Below, one piece after another: positions 31,841-47,791 of a stretch of DNA of 64,000 nucleotides. The translations under genes were made by a program, and so were the position numbers. How positions within the stretch are numbered: position 1 is the stretch's first letter; each line of letters begins with the position of its first letter. The stretch spans positions 1 through 64,000 of IMG/VR virus record IMGVR_UViG_3300025869_002060; one strand, given 5' to 3'. Below the pieces are notes generated by a model that searched no databases, had not been told where the DNA came from, and saw only the letters and a program-made list of their open reading frames with translations.

Positions 31841-33292
31841 ATGCCAAGATGTGTACTACACGTTAAAGACGAAGTTAATGTTAAGTTAGAAGGATTAGAA
31901 CTTACAGAAAGACGAAAACTTGCTAAGAAGTTTTCTTTTGAAGTGCCTGGTGCAAGGTATATGCCGGCAGTACGTCTTGGTAGGTGGGATGGATGTGTAA
32001 GTTTCTTCCAACTTGGTGGTAGCACATATATCAACTTACTTGATCAAATCTTACCTGAGATAAGTCATTACGAAATTGAAATAGAAGATCACAGAGACTA
32101 CAATACTAAATTTGAGTTTGATGAAGTTTCAGAAACTACATACTCAGATAAAGCATGGCCAAAAGGACACCCAGTTGAAGGTGAACCTATCCTATTAAGA
32201 GACTATCAAGTTGAACTTATCAATAATTTTCTTACCAACCCACAATGTATCCAAGAAGTAGCGACAGGTGCTGGTAAAACAATTATGACGGCTTCATTGA
32301 GTCAGAGTGTAGAGCAGTATGGTAGAAGTATTGTAATTGTTCCTAACAAAAGTTTGGTAACACAAACAGAAGAAGACTATATTAATATGGGTTTAGATGT
32401 TGGTGTATACTTTGGTGATCGAAAAGAGTTTGATCATACACATACTATCTGCACATGGCAAAGTCTAAATATTTTAATGAAGAATACTCGTAACGATACT
32501 GCTAACATCACGATACAAGAGTTCATTGAAGGTGTAGTTTGTGTTATTGTTGATGAAGTACACATGGCAAAAGCAGATGCATTAAAAACTCTGCTAACAG
32601 GTGTTATGTCGCGAGTGCCAATTCGGTGGGGTTTAACAGGTACAGTACCAAAAGAAATGTATGAACAAGTAAGTTTGTTCTGTAGCATTGGTACCGTAAT
32701 CGGAAAACTAAGTGCTAGTGAGTTACAAGAAGCTGGACACTTAGCACAATGCAAAGTAAATGTGGTACAGTTAATGGATCACAGCGAATATAACAACTAT
32801 CAAAGTGAGCTTAAATATCTATTAGAACAACCTGACAGACTTGATTATATTGCAAGTGTAATTGACAAGGTCAAAGAAAGTGGAAATACTTTCGTATTAG
32901 TGGACAGAATAAATGCAGGAAAAGAACTTGAGAAAAGGATTCCGTCTGCCGTATTTGTTAGCGGTGGAACGAAAGCAAAAGAACGTAAGGACCATTATGA
33001 CGAGGTGGCTGATGCAACTAATAAAGTTATTATTGCTACTTACGGTGTTGCCGCTGTTGGCATTAATATCCCTCGTATATTCAATTTGGTATTACTTGAA
33101 CCGGGTAAGAGTTTTGTTAGGGTAATACAGAGTATTGGTAGAGGAATTAGAAAAGCAGAAGACAAGGACCATGTTGAGATATGGGATATCACAAGTACAT
33201 GTAAATTTGCTAAACGTCATTTAACAAAACGTAAACAGTTTTATCGTGAAGCCAACTACCCCTTTCAAATCGAAAAGGTAGAATGGAAATGA
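31841..33292 (+). CDS. uvsW: SF2 DNA helicase (UvsW-like)
   Basis: LRDYQ, ATGAGKT, VIVDEVH, GLTGT, AVGINIP, QSIGRGIR. Confidence 0.85.
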   Translation: MPRCVLHVKDEVNVKLEGLELTERRKLAKKFSFEVPGARYMPAVRLGRWDGCVSFFQLGGSTYINLLDQILPEISHYEIEIEDHRDYNTKFEFDEVSETTYSDKAWPKGHPVEGEPILLRDYQVELINNFLTNPQCIQEVATGAGKTIMTASLSQSVEQYGRSIVIVPNKSLVTQTEEDYINMGLDVGVYFGDRKEFDHTHTICTWQSLNILMKNTRNDTANITIQEFIEGVVCVIVDEVHMAKADALKTLLTGVMSRVPIRWGLTGTVPKEMYEQVSLFCSIGTVIGKLSASELQEAGHLAQCKVNVVQLMDHSEYNNYQSELKYLLEQPDRLDYIASVIDKVKESGNTFVLVDRINAGKELEKRIPSAVFVSGGTKAKERKDHYDEVADATNKVIIATYGVAAVGINIPRIFNLVLLEPGKSFVRVIQSIGRGIRKAEDKDHVEIWDITSTCKFAKRHLTKRKQFYREANYPFQIEKVEWK

Positions 33293-35520: not shown

Positions 35521-35854
35521 TGATATTCATGTAACGATTGATAACATTGGTGGCAAGGTTATCAAAGACACGGAGAAATATGAGCTAACTGACAATTCTC
35601 ATTTAAATAACTTAGTACTAAGTAAAACTAGATTGAGAGCAAACCAATCAACAAATGGTCATCGACATAGCGGTCAGGAAGAAGTCTACTATTTTATTGC
35701 AGGTGAAGGTAAAATGGAATTAGACTATAAAGAAATAAATGTAAAACCTGGCGACATTGTATTAATTGAAGATAATGTATTTCATAAGGTGCATAATACT
35801 GGTGATTATTATTTAGATTTTATTTGCGTATTTGAAGGAAGAAGGAAACATTAA
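35498..35854 (+). CDS. cupin-domain protein
   Basis: GHRHSGQEEVYYFIAGEG...PGDIVLI...FHKVHN. Confidence 0.85.
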   Translation: MTMQKSGNDIHVTIDNIGGKVIKDTEKYELTDNSHLNNLVLSKTRLRANQSTNGHRHSGQEEVYYFIAGEGKMELDYKEINVKPGDIVLIEDNVFHKVHNTGDYYLDFICVFEGRRKH

Positions 35855-36393
35855 TGCAGGCACGACTAGCGGTCGCACACCCAGATGATTGTTGCATCTT
35901 TGGTTGGCCGCTTATATATATGACTAGAAGAGTATGGCGCTGGTCCATTGTATACTTAACGTATAACGAAAGTGATCCACGAGCTCAAGAAGCGACAGCC
36001 TTCTGGTATAAACACAAAGTCTTAACTGAATTCTTAGGTTTTGAAGACCATTATAGAGATCTTGAACAAGGGTTTATTAGCACATTTAACGAAGAAGAAG
36101 CATCACAAGCATTACAAGAAAATCTTAAAGACGTTGATTTAATTGTTACTCATGGTGCCGAAGGAGAGTACGGACATATACATCATAAGTTTGTTCACAA
36201 TGTAGTAAATCTTATGCCTCAACCTAAGATTTATTTCTCTCCAAAAGAAACTAGCAATGCTGGAGTGACAGCTCCTACTTTTAGTTTGAACGATTGGCCA
36301 TTGCACCGCGAAGTAATTGAAGGATTTAAGGATAGAGAACATGGGTATTATTGGGTCACAGAAGAAGCTAAACGCCGACAGCTTTATATATGA
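35854..36393 (+). CDS. PIG-L/LmbE-family deacetylase-like protein
   Basis: VAHPDD and THGAEGEYGHIHH motifs. Confidence 0.75.
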   Translation: MQARLAVAHPDDCCIFGWPLIYMTRRVWRWSIVYLTYNESDPRAQEATAFWYKHKVLTEFLGFEDHYRDLEQGFISTFNEEEASQALQENLKDVDLIVTHGAEGEYGHIHHKFVHNVVNLMPQPKIYFSPKETSNAGVTAPTFSLNDWPLHREVIEGFKDREHGYYWVTEEAKRRQLYI

Positions 36394-36800: not shown

Positions 36801-37307
36801 ATGGCCACAGAAAAGATGATTACGCTGGCAGGAAAGACGAAGATGGATAAACTGAACATACGCAACGAAATGTCTGCATTGGATCACAAACAACGTGACT
36901 ACTATGATAGCATGACAGATGATGAAAAGAAAAAGTTTGCGGCTTTTCTTATGATACGTTGGGGAAGTGCAGTTACAGGAGATACAATACTACAACAGTA
37001 TTATCTTGCAAGTTGTAATCAACGACTTAATAAAAACTTCTTTGACATTAGTGCGAGCAAACATAAGAAATTTTTGTGGCTGTTAGCAACTACAATCAGT
37101 CCAGGAATGGGCAATCATTATCACAAATGGATTTCACCTAAGAAGAAAACAAACAACAATAAAGCAGTAAAGTTTTTAAAACAAATGTTTCCAAACCTCG
37201 ACGAAACTGATATAGAGATATTGGCAAAAATCAATGATAAACGAGATCTTAAGGACTTGGCAAGACGGCATGGCTGGGATGACAAGCGAATCAAAGCCGA
37301 GCTATAA
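36801..37307 (+). CDS. putative clamp-loader small subunit-like protein
   Basis: Size and helical pattern (YYDSMTDDEKKKF...LMIRW...WISPKKK) recall T4 gp62-like subunits; weak assignment. Confidence 0.4.
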   Translation: MATEKMITLAGKTKMDKLNIRNEMSALDHKQRDYYDSMTDDEKKKFAAFLMIRWGSAVTGDTILQQYYLASCNQRLNKNFFDISASKHKKFLWLLATTISPGMGNHYHKWISPKKKTNNNKAVKFLKQMFPNLDETDIEILAKINDKRDLKDLARRHGWDDKRIKAEL

Positions 37308-37974
37308 GTGTCAATATTGCGGTAAATCATATCGCAAAGAAAGCACACTTGCCGCTCATTTATGTGAGCCTAAACGTAGGTATCAACAAGAAAAGGAAGT
37401 TGGTGTACAACTTGGCTTCCAAGCATATCTGCGATTCTATGAACTTAGTCAAGGTAGTGCAAAATTAAAGACATACAAAGACTGTGTTGAAAGTCCATAC
37501 TACAGTGCCTTTATTAAGTTTGGCAGGCATTCACAGGCTGTTCGTTGTGTTAACTTTAAAAGTTTCACAGACTGGTTGTTAAAAAACAATAAAAAATTAG
37601 ATCACTGGACCAAAGAAGATTTATATCTTGAATGGTTATATCAGTATATGCGTAATGAAGGTGTTAGCGATGCACTTGAAAGAAGTATGCTGGAAATACA
37701 GAAATACTGTGACGAAACGGATAAGTTACAGTTTGTTGATTATTTCCGTTATGGAAATGAAAACAGAATCTGTCATCATATAAGTAATGGCAGAGTAAGT
37801 CCGTGGATCGTGTTCAATTGCGATAGTGGTGTATCGTTTTTGGAAAAACTTAACGAAGAACAACTAGGAATCATCTTGCCGTGGATTGATCCTGATTATT
37901 GGCAGAAAAAGTTTAAAGATTATGTTGCTGATAGAGAATGGGTCAAAGACATACTTAACAAGGGAGGGTTTTAA
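37234..37974 (+). CDS. zinc-finger hypothetical protein
   Basis: CQYCGKSYRKESTLAAHLC (C2HC/C2H2-like). Confidence 0.65.
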   Translation: MINEILRTWQDGMAGMTSESKPSYKCQYCGKSYRKESTLAAHLCEPKRRYQQEKEVGVQLGFQAYLRFYELSQGSAKLKTYKDCVESPYYSAFIKFGRHSQAVRCVNFKSFTDWLLKNNKKLDHWTKEDLYLEWLYQYMRNEGVSDALERSMLEIQKYCDETDKLQFVDYFRYGNENRICHHISNGRVSPWIVFNCDSGVSFLEKLNEEQLGIILPWIDPDYWQKKFKDYVADREWVKDILNKGGF

Positions 37975-38007: not shown

Positions 38008-38967
38008 TTGAAAATGAAAATCATAGCAGGAAACAGTAATAGAGATCTCGCCGAGCTTATTTCGGAACACTGTTTTGCCGCACTTGTGTCAGCAGATATT
38101 AAAACTTTTGCTGACGGTGAAAGCAGTGTGGAGTTTTTAGAAAACATCAGAGGTGAAGATGTTTTTATTATACAATCAACTAGTACTCCAGTTAACAATC
38201 ATTTGATGGAGTTACTTATTATGGTTGATGCGGCCAAACGAAGTAGTGCCAGACGTATTACCGCAGTTATGCCATACTTTGGTTATGCACGCCAGGATCG
38301 TAAGAGTGCAAGTCGTACGCCAATTACTGCAAAACTAGTTGCTAACTTGTTAACCCAAGCAGGCGCAGATAGAATCTTAACAATGGATCTACATGCAGGA
38401 CAAATACAAGGATTCTTTGATATTCCAGTTGATGACCTAACAAGTCGTTTAGTGTTCGCAAAAGATATTAAACGTAGCATTGAAGGGTTTTACGAGACTG
38501 AAATTGAGAACCAACCACAAACAGTATTTGTAAGTCCAGATGCTGGAGGTACAGTACGAGCAAGAAAATTTGCTGATATGTTTGGCGGAGATATTGCTAT
38601 TGTTGACAAACGTCGACCACGAGCAGGACAAAGTGAAGTAATGAACCTAATAGGTGAAGTTAAAGATAAACATGCAATCCTAGTAGACGATATTGTAGAT
38701 AGCGGAGGAACATTATGTCATGCCGCACAAGCAATTATGGATCAAGGTGCATTGAGCGTTCGTGCTTATATTACACACGGAGTACTGTCAGGCGAAGCAG
38801 TAAAAAGAATTGAAAAAAGTGTATTGTCCGAACTAGTAGTTACGGATAGTATCAACTCACGAGATATAACTAAGTTAAAGAAGGTACGTGAAGTATCTGT
38901 TGGAACATTATTTGGCGAAGCAATTCGTCGAGTAGCAAACGAAGAATCAGTGAGCTCGTTATTTTAA
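38008..38967 (+). CDS. prs: ribose-phosphate pyrophosphokinase (PRPP synthetase)
   Basis: [45 protein letters not shown]. Confidence 0.97.
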
Positions 38968-39545
38968 TGCAATTTAAAAGTGATATTGATATAGACTTTG
39001 GTGATCGTACACAAGTACTTGATTTATTAAGTCCTGTCCCAGCAAGTATCAAACGTGACGATGGTTTGGTTAAGCACAATACTGGAGTATATTTTCAACG
39101 TGTTCCTGTAGATCCTTACACAGGTTTATGTAGCATTGACCACAAAGAAAGTGAAGATAGAGGATACATCAAACTTGACTTACTAAATGTTAACGTTTAT
39201 AAACAAGTTAAGAATGAAGAACATTTAAAACAGTTGTTAGAAAAAGAACCTGAATGGGATAGGCTTTATGATAAATCATTCTGTGAGCAGTTAATTCACA
39301 TCAATGATCATTATGAAACTCTAGTACGTATGCCTGAAGCAGTTAATACTATTCCAAGACTTGCAATGTTCTTAGCAGTTATACGTCCTGGAAAACGTGC
39401 ATTGATAGGACAAAGATGGAAAGAAGTTGCAAAAACCGTTTGGGAAAAGCCCGCCGACGAGACCTATTATTTTAAGAAGTCGCATAGTGTAGCATATGCA
39501 AACCTAGTAGTAGTTCATATGAACTTAATCAGTCTTTCGAACTAA
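38967..39545 (+). CDS. minimal DNA polymerase III alpha (DnaE/family C) catalytic-core protein
   Basis: SDIDIDF, KHNTGV, KLDLL, IRPG and FKKSHSVAYA appear in DnaE order within only 192 aa. Confidence 0.75.
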   Translation: MQFKSDIDIDFGDRTQVLDLLSPVPASIKRDDGLVKHNTGVYFQRVPVDPYTGLCSIDHKESEDRGYIKLDLLNVNVYKQVKNEEHLKQLLEKEPEWDRLYDKSFCEQLIHINDHYETLVRMPEAVNTIPRLAMFLAVIRPGKRALIGQRWKEVAKTVWEKPADETYYFKKSHSVAYANLVVVHMNLISLSN

Positions 39546-39905
39546 CGTAATACTACGTCTTTTGCTACGCCTAGCACCTAGTTGTTTTAGGCTAGTACTT
39601 GGACCAAATCTTATATCTACATCCTTGCTATTAAATGTGGATCTGCATGTTTGGAATTGGAACCAATCGTGTTTTAAAAACACATTGATTGGAATTAATC
39701 TATTAGATTCCCACCACCATACGTCGGCTAAGTCCAAGAAACTCATCTTCTCTTCTTTTGATTTTAATTTACTATAATCATAGATCGTAGTAATTTGTTC
39801 ATCGCTATTCTGGATTATACCGATATATTCAACTCCACCGTATACTAGGTAGGTTAAAAATGGGTACTGCTCAAGTAGCTCTGTTATCTGTTCTTCAGTG
39901 TACAA
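39525..39905 (-). CDS. conserved hypothetical phage protein
   Basis: 126 aa, YPFL...YIGIIQN...WWWESNRLIPIN. Confidence 0.7.
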   Translation of the reverse strand: MYTEEQITELLEQYPFLTYLVYGGVEYIGIIQNSDEQITTIYDYSKLKSKEEKMSFLDLADVWWWESNRLIPINVFLKHDWFQFQTCRSTFNSKDVDIRFGPSTSLKQLGARRSKRRSITLVRKTD

Positions 39906-40395: not shown

Positions 40396-40466
40396 ACTAC
40401 TTTATTTTCTGAGGACTTGGTATTTGCTTAAATATCAAGCAATCCCTTTTGTTACAAGGAACCTCT

Positions 40467-41288
40467 ATGAAATTAAACTTATCCCGCATTGAAGAACGAA
40501 CAGAACTACTTGAAAATCACTTACTTTTCCAAGGCGACTGTCTAAAAACATTAGACCAATTACATATCTTTATGGAACACCATGTATATGCTGTATGGGA
40601 TTTCATGAGTCTTATTAAATCATTACAAATGCATATATGCCCAAGCACTGAGTGCTGGGTTCCTACAAAATGGGCACGTGCCGGATTAGCACGTATAATC
40701 AACGAAATTGTACTAGGTGAAGAAAGCGATATAGACATCGGTGGTGAAAGTAGTATTACACATCATGATTTATATGCACAAGCAATGTTAGAAGTGGGTT
40801 CAAACGGGAGACCATTTGAAGAATTCATTGAACGTGTACGCAATTTAGGATTTAATGACGCAATGGAAAATGCTCATGTTCCTCCAGCAAGTGCAAGTTT
40901 TATGAAGACAACATTTGGATTTATTGACACAAGAAAACCACATGTTATTGCCGGTGCATTTGCATTCGGCAGGGAAAAACTAATACCTACTATGTTCAGT
41001 AGTTTGTTAAGACAAATGAAGTTTACAGAACATGATGCTCCAAAGTTCCATTACTATTTAGAGAGGCATATTGAGCTAGATGGCGACGAACATGGCCCTG
41101 CGGCAGTGCATCTAGTAGAAACCTTATGTGATAATGATCCAGTAAAAATACACGAAGCAGAAACATCAGCACTTGACGCCCTTGATGCTCGTATACGTTT
41201 ATGGGATGCCGTGTATAGTATTATCAACGACCCTGATGAAAAATTTCTATATAGTGAGTTATTTTTAGCAGAAGGTATAGCCCCATAA
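40467..41288 (+). CDS. DUF3050 / heme-oxygenase-like diiron enzyme
   Basis: HHVYAVWDFMSL, INEIVLGEESD, FAFGRE, YLERHIELDGDEHG. Confidence 0.8.
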   Translation: MKLNLSRIEERTELLENHLLFQGDCLKTLDQLHIFMEHHVYAVWDFMSLIKSLQMHICPSTECWVPTKWARAGLARIINEIVLGEESDIDIGGESSITHHDLYAQAMLEVGSNGRPFEEFIERVRNLGFNDAMENAHVPPASASFMKTTFGFIDTRKPHVIAGAFAFGREKLIPTMFSSLLRQMKFTEHDAPKFHYYLERHIELDGDEHGPAAVHLVETLCDNDPVKIHEAETSALDALDARIRLWDAVYSIINDPDEKFLYSELFLAEGIAP

Positions 41289-41289
41289 T

Positions 41290-42768
41290 ATGTCCGAAAT
41301 CGTTTTATTAACAGGACTCGCAGTAACTGGTAGATTATATAGATCTATGGGCGGAGCTCAATTGGCTTGGTGGTTACGGCAATCTAACTATGATGTACAA
41401 GTAATTGATTTTTTCTGTCAGATGAGCGACGAGGATTTACTTAAACTATACGCAAAGTTTATTACTAAAAGAACAAGAATAGTGGGCTTTGGAATCATGG
41501 GAACATACAATCCTATGATGGGACAACTAGTAAGATTTGTTGAAGAAATGATGCCCACACTTCGCAAGAAATTTCCACATGTTATATTTGTATGTGGCGG
41601 TGCTTGTGCCCAACTTGCAAGTAAACGTTACACACAAGGATCAGGTTTTGATTATTACTATTATGGATATGCAGAAAATACTTTTCTAAGTTTATGTAAT
41701 CAAGTTTTTAGAAAAGGTTCTCAGGTTGATGTAGAAAGAAAACTTGGTAATAGGATTATTAGGGAATCAACTATATGCCCCTTAGATGAATCATCGTTAT
41801 TTACAATTAAAAGAGACGGGCATAGATGGCACGATAAAGATTGTATTATGCCTAACGAAAGTTTACCAATTGAAATAGGAAGAGGTTGTATTTTTAAATG
41901 TAAATTTTGTGCATTTCCACATGTTGGTAAAAAGAAAGGTGAGTATACAAGAACGTTACAACACCTAGAAGAAGAAATACTTAATAATTATTATAAGTTT
42001 GGTTCAACAAAATACTATTTGCTTGATGATACATTCAATGATGATGTTGATAAAATTAAAGATTTTAGCGACATGGTACAACGTTTACCTTTTAAAATTC
42101 ATATAGCAGGTTTTTGTAGAGCTGATTTACTTTGGGCTAATCCTGATACTCCACACTTACTTGAAGAAGCAGGAATGATTGGAACTTACTTTGGTATTGA
42201 AAGTTTTAACCAGTGTGCTTCAAAGTTTGTTGGTAAACCTTGGAGTTTCCAACATGCCCAAGACTACCTTATTAAGTTACGTCATGAGATATGGAAAGAA
42301 CGTATAAGTTTTCGTACAAGTATGATTATTGGATTGCCTGGTGACGATCGCAAAGATTATATTAAATGGCACAGATGGTTTGTAGAAAATGAAATTCCAA
42401 ACTGGAGTTGGCATCCTCTACATCTTGAACGTGATCTACGAGCCCAAAATAATAGTACTATTGACAAGGATGCTGAAAAACACGGATACACTTGGATAAC
42501 TGAAAATAGTAAAGTTATGTGGAAGCACAAAGAGTCTGGTATGACATGGCGTGATGCAATGGAAATGTATACTGAATTTGAAGCACTTAAAGCACCATAT
42601 CAAGTTAAACATTGCTGGGGAGCAATAGAAGAATTTAATTACCTACCACCAGATGCTGATCCTCAGGATCATAACTTTGTTAAAGTACGAACCCAGCATA
42701 ACAAACAGTTAAATGAAGATCGCAAAACCTTCTTAAATGGTTATATTCGAAAGTTACTTGCCCTATAA
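41290..42768 (+). CDS. cobalamin-binding-domain radical SAM protein
   Basis: N-terminal B12-binding-like domain (VCGG, YYYGYAE); GRGCIFKCKFC; DDTF; GIESF; IIGLPG. Confidence 0.85.
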   Translation: MSEIVLLTGLAVTGRLYRSMGGAQLAWWLRQSNYDVQVIDFFCQMSDEDLLKLYAKFITKRTRIVGFGIMGTYNPMMGQLVRFVEEMMPTLRKKFPHVIFVCGGACAQLASKRYTQGSGFDYYYYGYAENTFLSLCNQVFRKGSQVDVERKLGNRIIRESTICPLDESSLFTIKRDGHRWHDKDCIMPNESLPIEIGRGCIFKCKFCAFPHVGKKKGEYTRTLQHLEEEILNNYYKFGSTKYYLLDDTFNDDVDKIKDFSDMVQRLPFKIHIAGFCRADLLWANPDTPHLLEEAGMIGTYFGIESFNQCASKFVGKPWSFQHAQDYLIKLRHEIWKERISFRTSMIIGLPGDDRKDYIKWHRWFVENEIPNWSWHPLHLERDLRAQNNSTIDKDAEKHGYTWITENSKVMWKHKESGMTWRDAMEMYTEFEALKAPYQVKHCWGAIEEFNYLPPDADPQDHNFVKVRTQHNKQLNEDRKTFLNGYIRKLLAL

Positions 42769-42809: not shown

Positions 42810-43817
42810 ATGTGGACTGAAGTACAAAATACACTAACTGGTGTTCTGCCGAGCAAGAAGAAAACGGCTAGTTCTGGCTGGATTAGCTTTAATGCTCCGT
42901 GTTGTGTACACAATGGAGAAACACCTGACACAAGAGGTCGCGGCGGCGTAATATTTAACGGACAAGGTACAGTTAATTATCATTGTTTTAACTGTAGTTT
43001 TAAAGCCAACTATACACCTGGACGTCTACTTAACTACAAATTTAAAAAGTTATTGGGCTGGCTTGGAGCCAATGATACAGTCATTAATAGACTGGTTATT
43101 GAAGCGATGCGAGTCAAGGATTTAATTGAACCAGAAGATATTGAAGAACCGCACACTGAAGAAATTAATATTAATGCAAGAAGTTTGCCCAACAATCTTA
43201 TTAACTTAAAAGAAGCAATAGCATTAGGTGAACAACTTCCTGATGAGCTAGGAAAGGCTGTAGATTATGTCAACCGCAGAGGCGTTAATCTTAACAAGTA
43301 TACTATCCACTGGACTAGTGATACTCATAACAATATGCATAGGCGAGTTGTTATTCCTATTACGTGGAAAAAGAAAGTAATGGGTTATACTGCAAGATCG
43401 TTTGACGATGTTGTTAAACCCAAGTATCATAATAACTATGAATCAAAGTTGGTTTATAACTTAGATAACCAACACTACGATAATGAAATTGCAATAGTAT
43501 GTGAAGGTCCATTTGATGCACTTGCAATTGATGGTATTGCTACTCTTGGTAGTGAGATCAATAATATTCAAGCACAGCTCATTGAGAACCTAGATAAACA
43601 TATTATAGTTGTTGCTGATACTGATGTGTCAGGCGACGGATTAATTAAGGCCGCACTGAAAAACGGTTGGTCAGTTAGTTTTCCAGTTTGGCAGAAAGAT
43701 TACAAAGATGTGTCAGAAGCAGTTGAACATCTTGGAAAACTATTTGTAATGAAAAGCATTATAGACGGTGTTGAGACAAACCCGTTGAAAATCAAACTTA
43801 GGAGAAAGATCAAATGA
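42810..43817 (+). CDS. DNA primase (T4 gp61-like)
   Basis: Zn ribbon CCVH...HCFNC; TOPRIM VCEGPFDA, ADTD. Confidence 0.85.
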   Translation: MWTEVQNTLTGVLPSKKKTASSGWISFNAPCCVHNGETPDTRGRGGVIFNGQGTVNYHCFNCSFKANYTPGRLLNYKFKKLLGWLGANDTVINRLVIEAMRVKDLIEPEDIEEPHTEEININARSLPNNLINLKEAIALGEQLPDELGKAVDYVNRRGVNLNKYTIHWTSDTHNNMHRRVVIPITWKKKVMGYTARSFDDVVKPKYHNNYESKLVYNLDNQHYDNEIAIVCEGPFDALAIDGIATLGSEINNIQAQLIENLDKHIIVVADTDVSGDGLIKAALKNGWSVSFPVWQKDYKDVSEAVEHLGKLFVMKSIIDGVETNPLKIKLRRKIK

Positions 43818-44491: not shown

Positions 44492-45385
44492 ATGAATCAA
44501 TTTTGGATAACAGGTAATCCCGGAAGCGGTTATCATTTGATAGAAGCACTAATAAGGTTTTGCAGTGGATTAGACTTTGATAAAAATCTACAACCGCTGG
44601 AGCCTTTGCACTGTTTTCATAGACATCATCAGACGCAATCATTGATACCTACAATGGAACTGCAAGATAATCGCTCAACATTGCAACAGTTAGTCCAACC
44701 AATTGACAATAATAATCCAAGGGTAGTTACAGTAACAGCACCAATGGCTGAAACTGGAATTGACGCTGTCTTCAATATAGTAAAAGATAGAGGTCATTTT
44801 ATTTTTTTAAATGCACAAGATCCTGTTTTTGGAATTGTGTTTTCGCAGACGTCCAGTAATGATCCACGTAAAAATGCTATATCGTTTATGCCTAACAATA
44901 ATGTTAAGCAATGGAACAGTGAAGCTGAAGTTTTTACAGACCTTGAAAGATGGGAACAACGTGAATATCTAAGTTCGTTTATTGAACACTATTGGACAGA
45001 ACTAGAAAGCCAACGACAATTAGCAATGTCATATGGAGCCACTTGTTATTTTACTGAATCGTTTATGACAGATCCCGACAGAGTTTGTCGAGCAGTGTTT
45101 GAAAAGTTTGAAATACCAATAGCCGACGAACAAACGTTTGATATTCTAATAGAGCTGTGGAAACATCATTGCACACAAACAATATCCGATTACCAAAGTA
45201 TTAATTCTTGGAAACATGCTTTGGTAAATGAATCTGAATATGATTCCCAAATACCATTGCGTTCTTTAGTATATGAAGCTATAATACAAAGACATATCAG
45301 AACTGAACTTAATACTGAACTCAGGTGTGCTGGGCTAAACACATGGCCTACTACTGTCAGAGAACTAAAGGAATACTATGACTGA
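44492..45385 (+). CDS. P-loop/sulfotransferase-like hypothetical protein
   Basis: ITGNPGSG N-terminal loop; ESFMTDP..VC..VF. Confidence 0.45.
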   Translation: MNQFWITGNPGSGYHLIEALIRFCSGLDFDKNLQPLEPLHCFHRHHQTQSLIPTMELQDNRSTLQQLVQPIDNNNPRVVTVTAPMAETGIDAVFNIVKDRGHFIFLNAQDPVFGIVFSQTSSNDPRKNAISFMPNNNVKQWNSEAEVFTDLERWEQREYLSSFIEHYWTELESQRQLAMSYGATCYFTESFMTDPDRVCRAVFEKFEIPIADEQTFDILIELWKHHCTQTISDYQSINSWKHALVNESEYDSQIPLRSLVYEAIIQRHIRTELNTELRCAGLNTWPTTVRELKEYYD

Positions 45386-46760
45386 TTATACACCAGACTT
45401 ACAAAAATTATTCTTAGAAATGTTGATGGACGACGCACAAAGTTTTGTTCGTGTTGCAAACATTTATAATCCTAACAACTTTGATCAAGGATTAAGACCA
45501 ACTGCTGAGTTCCTTAAAGACCATAGTGAAAAGTATAAAGTTCTTCCAACGCACGATCAAGTAAAAGCACAAACTGGTGTAGATCTAAAACCACACACAG
45601 ACTTATCTGAAGACCATTATGATTGGTTTATGGCTGAGTTTGAAGCATTTACAAGACGTGGTGAATTAGAAAGAGCAATTCTTAAGAGTGCCGACTTATT
45701 AGAAAAAGGCGAATATGATCCAGTTGAGAAACTGATCAAAGATGCAGTGCAAATAAGTCTTACAAAAGATATGGGTACTGATTATTTTGCAGATCCACGT
45801 GGTAGATTGATGGCTGTTAAGAGCAACAACGGTCAGGTAAGTACAGGCTGGGAAACACTTGATAAAAAACTATTTGGTGGAATGAATAGAGGCGAGTTGA
45901 ATATCTTTGCAGGTGGCAGTGGATCTGGTAAAAGTTTGTTTATGCAAAACATAAGTCTAAATTGGATCACACAAGGTGTTAACGGAGTGTACATTACACT
46001 AGAACTTAGTGAAGAGCTTTGTGCAATGAGAATGGATGCAATGACAGCAAATATTGCAACCAGCCAAATATTTAAAGATCTTGACACACTTGAAATGAAG
46101 ATTAAGATGGCAGGAAAGAAAAGCGGAAAATTCCGTATTAAGTATATGCCAGCACAAAGCAATGTTAATCAGATTAGAAGTTATCTTAAAGAACTTCAAG
46201 TACAGACTGGCATGAAAGTTGATTTTGTAATGATTGACTATCTTGATCTTGTTATGCCAGTTAGTGCAAAAGTAAGTCCAAATGATTTGTTTATTAAAGA
46301 CAAGTATGTAAGTGAAGAACTACGTAATTTATCAAAAGAACTAAACGTATTAATGATTACTGCATCACAGTTGAACAGAAGTGCAGTTGAAGAAATAGAA
46401 TTTGATCATTCGCATATTGCTGGTGGATTGAGTAAAATTAATACTGCTGATAATGTTTTTGGTATTTTTACAAGTCGTGCAATGCGTGAACGTGGTAGAT
46501 ATCAAATACAGTTAATGAAAACAAGAAGCAGTAGTGGTGTTGGTCAAAAGGTAGACTTAGAATTTAATCTAGAAAGTTTACGTATTACAGATCCCGGTGA
46601 AGAAGGACAAGATAGAGGTCCAGTTGAAGCAAGTAGTGATATACTTGGAAAGATTAAAACTTCTAGTGTAACTGACAAACCTAACTTGGATACAGCCAAA
46701 GTTGGTGCAAGTGTAGACGGTAGCAAGTTAAAGAACATGCTGGCTGGTTTAAAATCATGA
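45378..46760 (+). CDS. replicative DNA helicase (DnaB/gp41 family)
   Basis: GGSGSGKS, YITLEL, MIDYLDL, TASQLNR, SKINTAD, LMKTR. Confidence 0.92.
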   Translation: MTDYTPDLQKLFLEMLMDDAQSFVRVANIYNPNNFDQGLRPTAEFLKDHSEKYKVLPTHDQVKAQTGVDLKPHTDLSEDHYDWFMAEFEAFTRRGELERAILKSADLLEKGEYDPVEKLIKDAVQISLTKDMGTDYFADPRGRLMAVKSNNGQVSTGWETLDKKLFGGMNRGELNIFAGGSGSGKSLFMQNISLNWITQGVNGVYITLELSEELCAMRMDAMTANIATSQIFKDLDTLEMKIKMAGKKSGKFRIKYMPAQSNVNQIRSYLKELQVQTGMKVDFVMIDYLDLVMPVSAKVSPNDLFIKDKYVSEELRNLSKELNVLMITASQLNRSAVEEIEFDHSHIAGGLSKINTADNVFGIFTSRAMRERGRYQIQLMKTRSSSGVGQKVDLEFNLESLRITDPGEEGQDRGPVEASSDILGKIKTSSVTDKPNLDTAKVGASVDGSKLKNMLAGLKS

Positions 46761-47791
46761 TCACGTATGAAGATATACGTGAAATACATCTTGAACTAAC
46801 TACACTATGCAATGCAAAATGCCCACAATGTCCACGCAACTTTAATGGATTCACCTTTAACGACGGATATCCTGAAACTTATATGACGCTGGATCAAGCC
46901 AAGCATATATTTAATCCTACTTTTCTCAAGCAACTTACACAATTTACAATCAATGGTAACTATGGAGACATGGTAATGAATCCAGATTCTGTTGACATTG
47001 TTGAGTACCTTAGAGAAACAAACTCAGATGTAGAAATTATTATCAGTACCAATGGAGGTGCTAGAAACAAAGAGTTTTGGCAAAGACTTGCTAAAGCAAA
47101 TACAAAAGTATACTTTGATCTTGACGGTATTGATGAAGTACACAGTTTATACAGACAAAATACTCGATATCAAACAGTTATTAAGAATGCATTAACATAT
47201 ATTGGTGCAGGCGGCCATGCTATATGGAAATGTATTAAATTCAAACACAATGTACATCAAATTGAAGAAATGCGCCAATTGAGTGTTGATTTTGGTTTTA
47301 AAACATTTGAACTGATTGAGCATGGACGAGATACAGGTCCAGTGTTTAACGACAACAAAGAACTAACACACATACTAGGAGATTACAACGGTACAACAGA
47401 CTTTGAAACTATGTTTGTTGATGAACGTTCTGAATCTCGTACTGTAGATAATACAGCCTGGCGGTTTGATCCAACAGTTGACGATATTCAACTTGGGTGT
47501 GATACATTACAGAACAACAGGATTTATATTGCGGCCAATGGCGATGTTGCTCCTTGTTGTTATACTGGTTTCTTTCCAAATACATATGGTAAAAAAACAT
47601 ATATGGAACCATTAAATGCCCAGTTAACTGAGTTAATGTCAGAATATAATGCACTTGAACATGATATAGAAACATGTATCAAATGGTTTAATGGTTTTAC
47701 AGACCTATGGAAGAAGAAAAGTTATAAGGATGGGCGTTTATTGGTCTGTGATGAGAACTGTGGGAGCACCAATTGTTCTCAAAAACAATAA
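46757..47791 (+). CDS. radical SAM protein with SPASM/twitch-like tail
   Basis: CNAKCPQC, NGNYGD, STNGG, C...NGDVAPCC...CDENC. Confidence 0.88.
   Translation: MITYEDIREIHLELTTLCNAKCPQCPRNFNGFTFNDGYPETYMTLDQAKHIFNPTFLKQLTQFTINGNYGDMVMNPDSVDIVEYLRETNSDVEIIISTNGGARNKEFWQRLAKANTKVYFDLDGIDEVHSLYRQNTRYQTVIKNALTYIGAGGHAIWKCIKFKHNVHQIEEMRQLSVDFGFKTFELIEHGRDTGPVFNDNKELTHILGDYNGTTDFETMFVDERSESRTVDNTAWRFDPTVDDIQLGCDTLQNNRIYIAANGDVAPCCYTGFFPNTYGKKTYMEPLNAQLTELMSEYNALEHDIETCIKWFNGFTDLWKKKSYKDGRLLVCDENCGSTNCSQKQ

What the first reader, a model, noticed from the sequence alone, without database searches (positions are those of the whole stretch)
38967..39545. 192-aa minimal family-C polymerase core
Seen: all hallmark DnaE motifs in order (DIDID with two catalytic Asp, KHxxG, KxD with the third Asp, RPG, FxKSHxxAY). 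Known: in cellular DnaE (over 1000 aa) these motifs span roughly 350-400 residues plus PHP, clamp-binding and OB domains. No other DnaE fragment or intein is visible in this window. Inference: a radically compacted or split polymerase. It may be one subunit of a multi-gene replicase, or a stand-alone primer/repair polymerase or nucleotidyltransferase.
Basis: partly seen in the sequence, partly recalled or inferred. Interest (0 to 1): 0.66.

Follow-up and report, generated by a model that had tools for sequence, protein, structure and literature searches.

The report
Half of a split mini-polymerase
This 192-residue gene is the magnesium- and DNA-binding half of a stripped-down, two-gene version of the bacterial DNA polymerase III catalytic subunit that one clade of giant phages carries alongside a normal family B polymerase; the system was described by computation in 2021, so this is a new copy of a known but still untested oddity.

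Summary
The ORF at 38967..39545 (+, 192 aa) is real, intact and under purifying selection.

It is not a stand-alone enzyme. It lacks the G-R-G-S nucleotide-binding part of the active site. That part sits in a second small gene (173 aa, matches Pfam PF07733) about 85 kb downstream in the same 228-kb phage record, outside the window. The partner ends just before the catalytic Asp motif with which the 192-aa protein begins, so the catalytic core itself is cut in two.

A complex prediction supports binding of the two halves (score 0.92, best control 0.00). A fold search puts family-C polymerases in the top seven places.

Both halves co-occur, always as separate distant genes, in about 96-100 sequenced jumbo phages (RaK2/121Q/GAP32, PA5oct, Atu_ph07) and in thousands of metagenomic protein clusters. 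The record also encodes an intact 887-aa family B polymerase and shows no PHP domain.

Iyer et al. 2021 (PMC7824862) already described this split minimal Pol III alpha in group 2.2 jumbo phages. No biochemistry was found. Verdict: a new member of a known kind. One added lead is a tightly linked zinc-finger protein gene upstream.

The parts
38967..39545 (+). C-terminal half (192 aa) of the split minimal DNA polymerase III alpha. It holds the metal-binding palm strands and a shortened fingers domain.
   Evidence: ORF. phrog_11778 at E 9e-64. The top seven structural hits are family-C polymerases. Motifs map to E. coli DnaE 401-779. dN/dS is about 0.13.
38982..38999 (+). D6-I-D8-I-D10-F11. This is the strand with the two catalytic aspartates, equivalent to E. 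coli D401 and D403.
   Evidence: Read directly from the sequence. Invariant in 47 homologues. Aligned to E. coli 401-406. In the complex model it pairs with partner residues 134-147.
39072..39086 (+). K36-H37-N-T-G40, equivalent to E. coli K510-H511. Only 16 residues separate it from the Asp strand region, where E. coli DnaE has its thumb domain of about 90 residues.
   Evidence: Secondary structure.
39171..39179 (+). K69-L-D71, holding the third catalytic aspartate, equivalent to E. coli K553/D555.
   Evidence: Invariant. hhalign local match to E. coli 541-562..
39384..39398 (+). R140-P-G-K143-R144. The RPG motif (E. coli 639-641) is joined directly to the basic pair equivalent to E. coli R709-R710, so about 67 fingers residues are deleted.
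39471..39497 (+). F169-K-K171-S-H173-S-V-A-Y177, the fingers motif equivalent to E. coli F756-Y764.
   Evidence: 9 of 12 residues identical to E. coli 754-765. Matches full-length phage DnaE profiles phrog_11165 (E 1.8e-4), phrog_12219 and phrog_405 at this motif.
37234..37974 (+). Conserved upstream neighbour: a 246-aa protein with one C2H2-type zinc finger followed by an all-helical body (phrog_11058). It is a candidate third component. This is inference only.
   Evidence: Lies upstream on the same strand in 80 of 80 related IMG/VR loci, with its stop overlapping the polymerase-half start in 45. Present in 93 phage records, upstream of the C-half in those compared, mostly within 0.03-1.2 kb. 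zf-C2H2 at E 9e-5. dN/dS is about 0.10.

Best explanation
The 192-aa protein is the C-terminal half of a two-subunit, minimal DNA polymerase III alpha-like enzyme of a T4-related ('group 2.2') jumbo phage.

What each half holds:
- The 173-aa partner is encoded about 85 kb away, outside the window. It supplies the N-terminal palm helices and the G-R-G-S loop, which binds the nucleotide triphosphate in DnaE.
- This protein supplies the strand with the two catalytic aspartates, the strand with the third aspartate, and a shortened fingers domain carrying the basic and K-S-H-x-x-x-Y residues, which face the incoming nucleotide in DnaE.

How it assembles: the break lies inside the Pol-beta-type nucleotidyltransferase core, between the G-S loop and the Asp-x-Asp strand. 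Neither half can be active alone, so they must assemble non-covalently into one active site. No intein is involved.

What is missing: there is no PHP domain, no thumb, no clamp-binding domain and no OB domain.

Likely role (inferred): because the phage has its own proofreading family B polymerase, the mini enzyme most likely acts as an accessory DNA-templated polymerase at or near the replication fork. Candidate jobs are gap filling, repair, recombination-dependent synthesis or primer extension. Its gene sits in the helicase-primase module.

Shown here: identity, split site, conservation, co-occurrence, predicted binding. Inferred: polymerase activity and the biological role.
For: Family and fold:
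- phrog_11778 over the full length at E 9e-64.
- The top seven structural hits are all family-C polymerases.
- The motifs map collinearly to E. coli DnaE.

Partner:
- PF07733 hits a 173-aa ORF at G000:C1:123689-124210.
- That ORF also matches phrog_11127, and matches phrog_405 at positions 362-429. The C-half matches the same 1190-position profile at 772-809.
- The partner ends at E. coli position 392-393, and this protein starts 5 residues before D401.

Binding:
- The complex prediction scored 0.92 in three runs, with a best control of 0.00. That mark was reached by 58 of 80 solved complexes and 2 of 110 mismatched pairs.
- The runs agree in at least 96% of contacts, and the partner pLDDT is at least 91.
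- C-half residues 6-12 contact partner residues 134-147.
- Alone, residues 1-80 of the C-half have low confidence.

Selection: the catalytic and nucleotide-binding residues are invariant in both halves, and dN/dS is 0.13 and 0.19.

Distribution:
- The two halves occur in about the same set of 96 and 100 phage records, 11 to about 180 kb apart in the records compared.
- Among 160 IMG/VR loci, neither half was found within 10 kb of the other.
- In all 80 N-half loci the ORF stops 0-1 residue after the E-F-L-K/R end.

Context:
- An intact family B polymerase with exonuclease domain is in the record.
- No PHP domain was found in the record or in three complete relatives.
- The gene lies between a UvsW-like helicase and the primase and DnaB-like helicase, as in PA5oct-type, Atu_ph07 and Phosso genomes.
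- Prior description: Iyer et al. 2021, PMC7824862.
Against: - No biochemical or genetic test of this family was found in the paper library. Polymerase activity is therefore inferred from conserved residues.
- Without a thumb, clamp-binding or OB domain, stable primer-template binding is uncertain.
- The complex prediction may partly reflect the model's memory of intramolecular contacts in solved DnaE structures.
- Sequence-only links of the C-half to cellular DnaE are weak: Pfam finds none, PDB sequence and profile searches find none, and hhalign against a single E. coli sequence gives only 12% probability.
- The record is estimated to be 65% complete, so further partners in the missing part cannot be excluded for this genome.
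Confidence: 0.8

Rival explanations
1. The heterodimer is a nucleotidyltransferase but not a templated DNA polymerase. It could be a template-independent tailing enzyme, a maker of a nucleotide signal, or an enzyme tied to DNA or nucleotide modification.
For: It lacks the thumb, clamp-binding, helix-hairpin-helix and OB parts that hold DNA in DnaE. The Pol-beta fold superfamily includes many non-polymerase transferases (established knowledge). In this genome, metabolic and radical-SAM genes surround the gene.
Against: It retains the fingers motifs that are specific to family-C polymerases rather than general to Pol-beta-type transferases: R-P-G, the basic pair and K-S-H-x-x-x-Y. These are invariant. 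The structural hits cover the fingers as well as the palm. In relatives the gene sits in the replication module without the metabolic genes.
Confidence: 0.12
2. The 192-aa protein is a stand-alone minimal polymerase or primer-repair enzyme that needs no partner.
For: It holds all three acidic residues and the fingers motifs.
Against: The G-R-G-S triphosphate-binding loop and the preceding palm strand are absent from it and are invariant in the partner. Its N-terminal 80 residues are poorly ordered when modelled alone. The partner co-occurs in essentially the same phage records.
Confidence: 0.03
3. The two genes are decaying remnants of a once full-length phage dnaE (pseudogene fragments).
For: It is small, the family domains are missing, and the two pieces are scattered in the genome.
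Against: There are thousands of homologues with the same lengths and the same ORF boundaries. Catalytic residues are invariant. dN/dS is 0.13-0.19 with saturated synonymous change. A tblastn search of the whole record with E. coli DnaE found no other dnaE-like remnant.
Confidence: 0.01
4. The halves are joined after translation by a split intein, as in cyanobacterial DnaE.
For: Distant genes for two parts of a dnaE are known in cyanobacteria, where split inteins join them (established knowledge). A relative's family B polymerase carries an intein.
Against: There is no room for intein parts. The N-half ORF stops 0-1 residue after the DnaE-homologous end in all 80 loci. The C-half has only 5 residues before the Asp motif. 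The combined spacing between the G-S loop and the first Asp is 34 residues, against 37 in E. coli.
Confidence: 0.01
5. The pair is a catalytically dead structural or regulatory module of the replisome.
For: Many phage and cellular polymerase paralogues are inactive accessory subunits (general knowledge). No activity has been shown.
Against: All three acidic residues, the G-R-G-S loop and the nucleotide-facing fingers residues are invariant across homologues down to 33-49% identity.
Confidence: 0.03

Closest known systems
Split minimal DNA polymerase III alpha of group 2.2 jumbo phages (Iyer, Anantharaman, Krishnan, Burroughs, Aravind 2021, Viruses 13:63, PMC7824862); PHROG families phrog_11778 (C-half) and phrog_11127 (N-half)
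   Same: Two small proteins from distant genes: an N-terminal nucleotide-binding part and a C-terminal metal- and DNA-binding part. No other Pol III domains. A family B polymerase lies in the same genome. The gene sits in a T4-like replication and recombination gene set.
   Different: Only lineage details differ. Identity to cultured-phage copies is 38-49%. The halves lie 85 kb apart. A ribose-phosphate pyrophosphokinase gene is inserted between the zinc-finger gene and this gene, and is absent from all 80 related loci. This copy has no C-terminal tail.
Bacterial DnaE / PolC (family-C replicative polymerases; structures 2hpi, 5fku, 5lew, 3f2b)
   Same: A Pol-beta-type palm with three acidic residues, a G-S triphosphate loop, and the fingers motifs R-P-G, the basic pair and K-S-H-x-x-x-Y, all in the same order.
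   Different: About 365 residues in two chains, against more than 1000 in one chain. There is no PHP domain. The thumb is reduced to about 16 residues. About 67 fingers residues are deleted, and everything after E. coli residue ~779 is absent, including the distal fingers and the clamp-binding, OB and tau-binding regions.
Cyanobacterial split DnaE joined by a split intein (from established knowledge, not tested here)
   Same: The catalytic subunit is encoded by two genes far apart on the genome.
   Different: In cyanobacteria the split lies late in the fingers, and the pieces carry intein halves that splice them into one full-length chain. Here the split is inside the catalytic core, no intein sequence is present, and the product is a minimal enzyme.
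Full-length Pol III alpha with PHP domain of group 3.2 jumbo phages (phage G type; PMC7824862) and phrog_405
   Same: Family-C polymerase encoded by a phage. Both halves hit phrog_405 collinearly.
   Different: Those are single-chain, host-like enzymes with a PHP domain and serve as the phage's main polymerase. This one is split, minimal and accompanies a family B polymerase.

Membership tests
Split minimal Pol III alpha of group 2.2 jumbo phages (Iyer et al. 2021) | A C-terminal metal- and DNA-binding subdomain encoded as a separate small protein | tested here: met
   192-aa ORF. phrog_11778 over the full length at E 9e-64. Three invariant Asp residues and the fingers motifs.
Split minimal Pol III alpha of group 2.2 jumbo phages (Iyer et al. 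2021) | A separate N-terminal nucleotide-binding subdomain protein in the same genome, encoded at a distance | tested here: met
   173-aa ORF at G000:C1:123689-124210. PF07733 at E 1.7e-9 and 9e-9, phrog_11127 at E 5e-43. It lies 85 kb from this gene.
Split minimal Pol III alpha of group 2.2 jumbo phages (Iyer et al. 2021) | No other Pol III alpha domains (PHP and the rest) in the genome | tested here: met
   No PF02811 and no PF17657 in the 228-kb record. No PF02811 in three complete relatives. tblastn with E. coli DnaE finds only the N-half. Caveat: the record is about 65% complete.
Split minimal Pol III alpha of group 2.2 jumbo phages (Iyer et al. 2021) | Accompanied by a family B DNA polymerase and a T4-like replication and recombination set | tested here: met
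   887-aa ORF with PF00136 and PF03104. UvsW-like helicase, DnaG-type primase and DnaB-like helicase in the window.
Split minimal Pol III alpha of group 2.2 jumbo phages (Iyer et al. 2021) | The two proteins reconstitute one enzyme | tested here: inconclusive
   The prediction supports binding (score 0.92 against best control 0.00). This is a model, not a measurement. No experiment was found.
Family-C DNA polymerases (DnaE/PolC) | A Pol-beta-type palm with three catalytic acidic residues and a G-S loop | tested here: met
   Met only by the two halves together.
Family-C DNA polymerases (DnaE/PolC) | An N-terminal PHP domain | tested here: not met
Family-C DNA polymerases (DnaE/PolC) | A thumb, complete fingers, and clamp-binding and OB domains | tested here: not met
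   The thumb is replaced by about 16 residues. The protein ends at E. coli position ~779. PF17657 is absent.
Family-C DNA polymerases (DnaE/PolC) | Template-directed DNA synthesis | not testable with these tools
   Needs a primer-extension assay.
Intein-split DnaE (cyanobacterial type) | Intein halves at the split ends | tested here: not met
   There is no extra sequence at either end.

The most novel reading that the evidence does not exclude
The mini Pol III is a three-part (or larger) machine. The zinc-finger/helical protein encoded immediately upstream (phrog_11058) is often translationally coupled to this gene. It would serve as the missing DNA-holding or replisome-docking subunit, replacing the thumb and clamp-binding parts and coupling the enzyme to the neighbouring primase-helicase. 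The pair would then act as a dedicated primer-extension or gap-filling polymerase beside the family B replicase. The acidic-aromatic C-terminal tails seen in about a fifth of homologues would be a second docking peptide.
Probability: 0.15. Interest if true: 0.65.

Novelty: new member of a known kind. Interest (0 to 1): 0.35.

Why it matters
The family is an unusual object. It is the smallest known family-C polymerase core, cut through its active site into two genes, and kept by a very large clade of giant phages that already own a proofreading family B polymerase.

If it is active, it would define the minimal catalytic unit of the bacterial replicase. Its discoverers have proposed it as a model for the ancestral form of the enzyme. 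It would also give a small two-piece polymerase scaffold, and would point to a division of labour between two polymerase families in one phage replisome.

For this scan, the value is mainly negative. The finding is real but already published and already in phage family databases. What remains open is biochemical, not genomic.

Tried and rejected
Searches on the C-half that gave nothing or little:
- Pfam scan, even at E 10: nothing.
- phmmer and profile search against PDB sequences: nothing, apart from one spurious transferrin-binding protein hit.
- Foldseek of the monomer model against PDB: nothing. The exhaustive aligner was needed instead.
- hhalign of the family alignments against a single E. 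coli DnaE sequence: only short, low-probability local matches, although they fell at the expected motifs.

Searches for further polymerase parts:
- A weak tblastn hit of E. coli DnaE residues 867-975 at G000:C1:149299-149598 was checked as a possible third fragment. It was rejected because it lies in a 587-aa charged, low-complexity protein.
- PF17657, PF02811 and PF00929 were not found in this record.

Zinc-finger neighbour: it was folded (pLDDT 87) and searched. No convincing fold match was found. The best Z was 4.9, and a T4 gp59 C-domain row at Z 4.2 is within noise.

Literature: the PA5oct omics paper and a 2026 jumbo-phage review say nothing about this gene. No experimental paper on the family was found.

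Tools not used:
- The large representative protein search, because the word search and family scans already settled the family.
- The read-mapping tools.
No other genetic code was needed.

Full report
**The observation**

The window holds an uninterrupted ORF at 38967..39545 on the + strand (ATG to TAA, 192 aa). Its start overlaps the stop of the preceding gene in the sequence TAATG.

A gapped local alignment to E. coli DnaE places them collinearly:
- D6/D8/D10 on D401/D403/D405.
- K36-H37 on K510-H511.
- K69/D71 on K553/D555.
- R140-P-G142 on R639-G641.
- K143-R144 on R709-R710.
- K171/H173/Y177 on K758/H760/Y764.

In E. coli the span from D401 to Y764 is 364 residues. Here it is 172. The compaction comes from three changes:
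- The thumb is lost: about 16 residues stand in place of E. coli 417-509.
- E. coli 642-708 is deleted.
- The protein ends near E. coli residue 779.

**Is it more than chance?**

- Pfam and PDB sequence searches are blank for this protein. However, it matches the 197-position PHROG profile phrog_11778 ('DNA polymerase') end to end at E 9e-64.
- Its K-S-H motif region matches three full-length phage DnaE-type profiles at E 1.8e-4 to 0.014.
- The word-index protein search returned at least 7,975 related clusters, all 186-254 aa among the 120 listed.
- In 47 aligned homologues the three Asp residues, H37, G40, K69, R140, P141, K143, R144, K170, H173 and Y177 are invariant.
- An AlphaFold model (mean pLDDT 74.7) is confident for residues 80-190 and poor for residues 1-80. 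It found nothing by Foldseek.
- In the exhaustive structural comparison against 48,161 chains, the seven best rows are all family-C polymerases: M. tuberculosis DnaE1 5lew at Z 8.9, Taq Pol III alpha 2hpi at Z 8.4, PolC 3f2b at Z 6.5, E. coli 5fku at Z 6.3, then 7pu7, 5m1s and 9qpc. The next hits are unrelated small helical proteins at Z of about 4.

**The missing half**

The window is the first 64 kb of a 228,348-bp IMG/VR virus record, estimated to be 65% complete.

A search of that record with Pfam PF07733 (Pol III alpha NTPase domain) found one match. It lies in a 173-aa ORF at G000:C1:123689-124210, about 85 kb downstream of the finding and outside the window.

This protein is phrog_11127 ('DNA polymerase', E 5e-43). 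It also matches the 1190-position DnaE profile phrog_405 at positions 362-429, while the 192-aa protein matches the same profile at 772-809.

Its residues 132-172 align to E. coli 352-392 and include an invariant G-R-G-S-S that corresponds to E. coli 361-364. The protein ends in E-F-L-K/R, which is E. coli position 392-393.

The 192-aa protein starts five residues before the equivalent of D401. The enzyme is therefore cut in the loop between the G-S loop helix and the Asp-x-Asp strand, inside the Pol-beta-type nucleotidyltransferase core. The spacing is preserved: 34 residues between the G-S serine and the first Asp, against 37 in E. coli.

It follows by inference that neither protein has a complete active site.

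**Do the halves fit together?**

A complex prediction with both family alignments scored 0.92 in each of three runs. The best of three controls scored 0.00. That mark was reached by 58 of 80 solved complexes and 2 of 110 mismatched pairs.

The runs agree in at least 96% of contacts, and the partner pLDDT is at least 91. The Asp strand (residues 6-12) pairs with partner residues 134-147, which are the strand and loop holding G-R-G-S.

The part of the 192-aa protein that was disordered when modelled alone becomes confident in the complex.

Caveat: solved DnaE structures contain these contacts within one chain, so the pass may partly be memory. It shows likeness and supports binding, but does not prove it.

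**Conservation and distribution**

- tblastn against 50,697 phage records finds the C-half in 96 records and the N-half in 100, with about the same taxonomic make-up: Escherichia 34, Pseudomonas 11, Klebsiella 10-11, Erwinia 8, Salmonella 8, and others. These are the RaK2/121Q/PBECO4/GAP32/CBB group, PA5oct/MIJ3, Atu_ph07, Phosso, XacN1, SCTP-2 and RsoM2USA.
- The two genes are always separate. In the records compared they lie about 31-43 kb apart in 121Q, GAP32 and PA5oct, and about 180 kb apart in Atu_ph07.
- A 141-kb Alishewanella phage also has both, 11 kb apart.
- In 80 IMG/VR loci centred on the C-half and 80 centred on the N-half, each with up to 10 kb of flank, the other half was never found. 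The N-half ORF stops 0-1 residue after its E-F-L-K/R end in all 80.
- Pairwise dN/dS, for the pairs whose synonymous distance was not saturated, has a median of 0.13 for the C-half and 0.19 for the N-half.
- There is no room for intein pieces at either end.

These results exclude the pseudogene, frameshift and intein readings.

**Genomic setting**

The same record encodes an intact 887-aa family B polymerase with its exonuclease domain, at G000:C1:156466-159129.

No PHP domain or Pol III fingers Pfam domain was found in the record. No PHP domain was found in the complete genomes of Phosso, Atu_ph07 or PAC2. A tblastn search of the whole record with E. coli DnaE finds only the N-half.

In the window the gene lies inside a replication module:
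- a UvsW-like helicase at 31841-33292;
- the zinc-finger protein at 37234-37974;
- this gene;
- a primase at 42810-43817;
- a DnaB-like helicase at 45378-46760.

The same order is seen in PAC2/PA5oct, Atu_ph07 and Phosso.

**What is already known**

[quoted passage not shown] They suggest it may cooperate with the family B enzyme in synthesis of one strand or in repair, and note that these phages lack the other Pol III domains.

The Atu_ph07 paper had earlier annotated a Pol III alpha subunit and an epsilon-like exonuclease as conserved in RaK2-like phages.

RefSeq and several recent submissions label both halves 'DNA polymerase' or 'DnaE-like'.

I found no biochemical or genetic study of the family.

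The finding is therefore a new, environmental member of a described family. It shares 38-49% identity with copies in cultured phages and up to 82% with metagenomic ones.

**How it most likely works**

Shown here:
- the family;
- the split site;
- the conservation of every residue that forms the metal site and nucleotide site of DnaE;
- co-occurrence of the halves;
- a confident predicted interface.

Inferred:
- the two proteins form an obligate heterodimer with one composite active site that catalyses template-directed DNA synthesis;
- because the phage has a proofreading family B polymerase, and because this gene sits with the primase and helicases, the role is accessory (repair, gap filling, recombination-dependent synthesis or primer extension).

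The main rival is a non-templated nucleotidyltransferase role, for which the lack of a thumb and of other DNA-holding domains speaks. The retention of polymerase-specific fingers motifs speaks against it.

1. The residue-level split site and the deletion map against E. coli DnaE.
2. A controlled complex prediction.
3. The scale of the family in metagenomes.
4. A tightly linked neighbour. A 246-aa protein with one C2H2-type zinc finger and an all-helical body (phrog_11058) lies upstream on the same strand in 80 of 80 related loci, with overlapping stop and start codons in 45. It lies upstream of the C-half in the cultured-phage genomes compared, mostly within 0.03-1.2 kb, and farther away in SCTP-2 (3.6 kb) and CM1 (10 kb). 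Its dN/dS is about 0.10. Its fold has no convincing match. Shared ancestry of these phages means that co-occurrence alone proves nothing.
5. Complete relatives carry a stand-alone DnaQ-like exonuclease. None was seen in this partial record.

**Limits**

- The record is incomplete.
- The complex score is a model's confidence, not a measurement.
- No expression data were examined.
- The read tools and the large representative search were not used, because the family was settled without them.

Noticed in passing
window 38008-38967 (+): A 319-aa ribose-phosphate pyrophosphokinase (PRPP synthetase, phrog_619 at E 3.5e-49) is inserted between the zinc-finger gene and the polymerase half. Its stop overlaps the polymerase ATG (TAATG). 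None of 80 related IMG/VR loci has it at this place, so it looks like a lineage-specific metabolic gene insertion into the replication module.
   Followed up: partly
window 37234-37974 (+): A conserved 246-aa protein (phrog_11058) with one C2H2-type zinc finger (C26, C29, H42, C44 invariant) followed by about 200 helical residues. It is always upstream of the polymerase half and is often translationally coupled to it. No clear structural relative was found (best Z 4.9; a T4 gp59 C-domain row at Z 4.2 is within noise). It is a candidate replisome or polymerase partner.
   Followed up: partly
window 39525-39905 (-): A 126-aa ORF on the opposite strand (phrog_11637, unknown function) converges on the polymerase half and overlaps its last 21 bases. 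It is present next to the gene in 78 of 80 related loci and in Phosso, Atu_ph07 and PAC2.
   Followed up: partly
window 35854-36393, 40449-41288, 41290-42768, 46757-47791 (+): Several enzymes are interleaved with the helicase-primase module: a PIG-L-type deacetylase, a DUF3050/haem-oxygenase-like protein (E 3e-81), a B12-binding radical SAM enzyme and a second radical SAM protein. They may act in nucleotide, DNA or cofactor modification.
   Followed up: no
homologues P0009-P0113 (not the window protein): About 26 of 120 close homologues of the C-half carry a conserved 15-residue C-terminal tail of the type E-D-N-L-K-R-F-V-E-P-V (acidic, then spaced hydrophobic/aromatic residues). Others carry ...N-K-S-D-T-L-T-L. 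The window protein ends without a tail. These could be docking peptides for a clamp or another partner.
   Followed up: no
G000:C1:124242-125376 (outside the window; L004:1763-2900): The N-half gene is followed, in 73-77 of 80 related loci, by a 205-aa proline-rich protein and a 124-aa GroES-like protein. A MazG-like pyrophosphohydrolase lies upstream in 24 loci.
   Followed up: partly
phage records W02 (Atu_ph07) 460326-460781 and W03 (PAC2) 164451-164912: Complete relatives encode a stand-alone DnaQ-like 3'-5' exonuclease (PF00929, E 1e-15 and 8e-19), which could proofread for the mini polymerase. None was found in the 65%-complete record that holds the window.
   Followed up: partly
OQ508956.1 Alishewanella phage vB_AspM_Slicko01, 67597-68064 and 79035-79169: Both halves also occur in a 141-kb phage that is not a jumbo phage, only 11 kb apart. 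The system is therefore not strictly tied to genomes over 200 kb.
   Followed up: no
L015, L026, L078 (IMG/VR loci): The zinc-finger gene carries one in-frame stop in 3 of 39 loci examined. This could be sequencing error, recoding or decay; it was not resolved.
   Followed up: no
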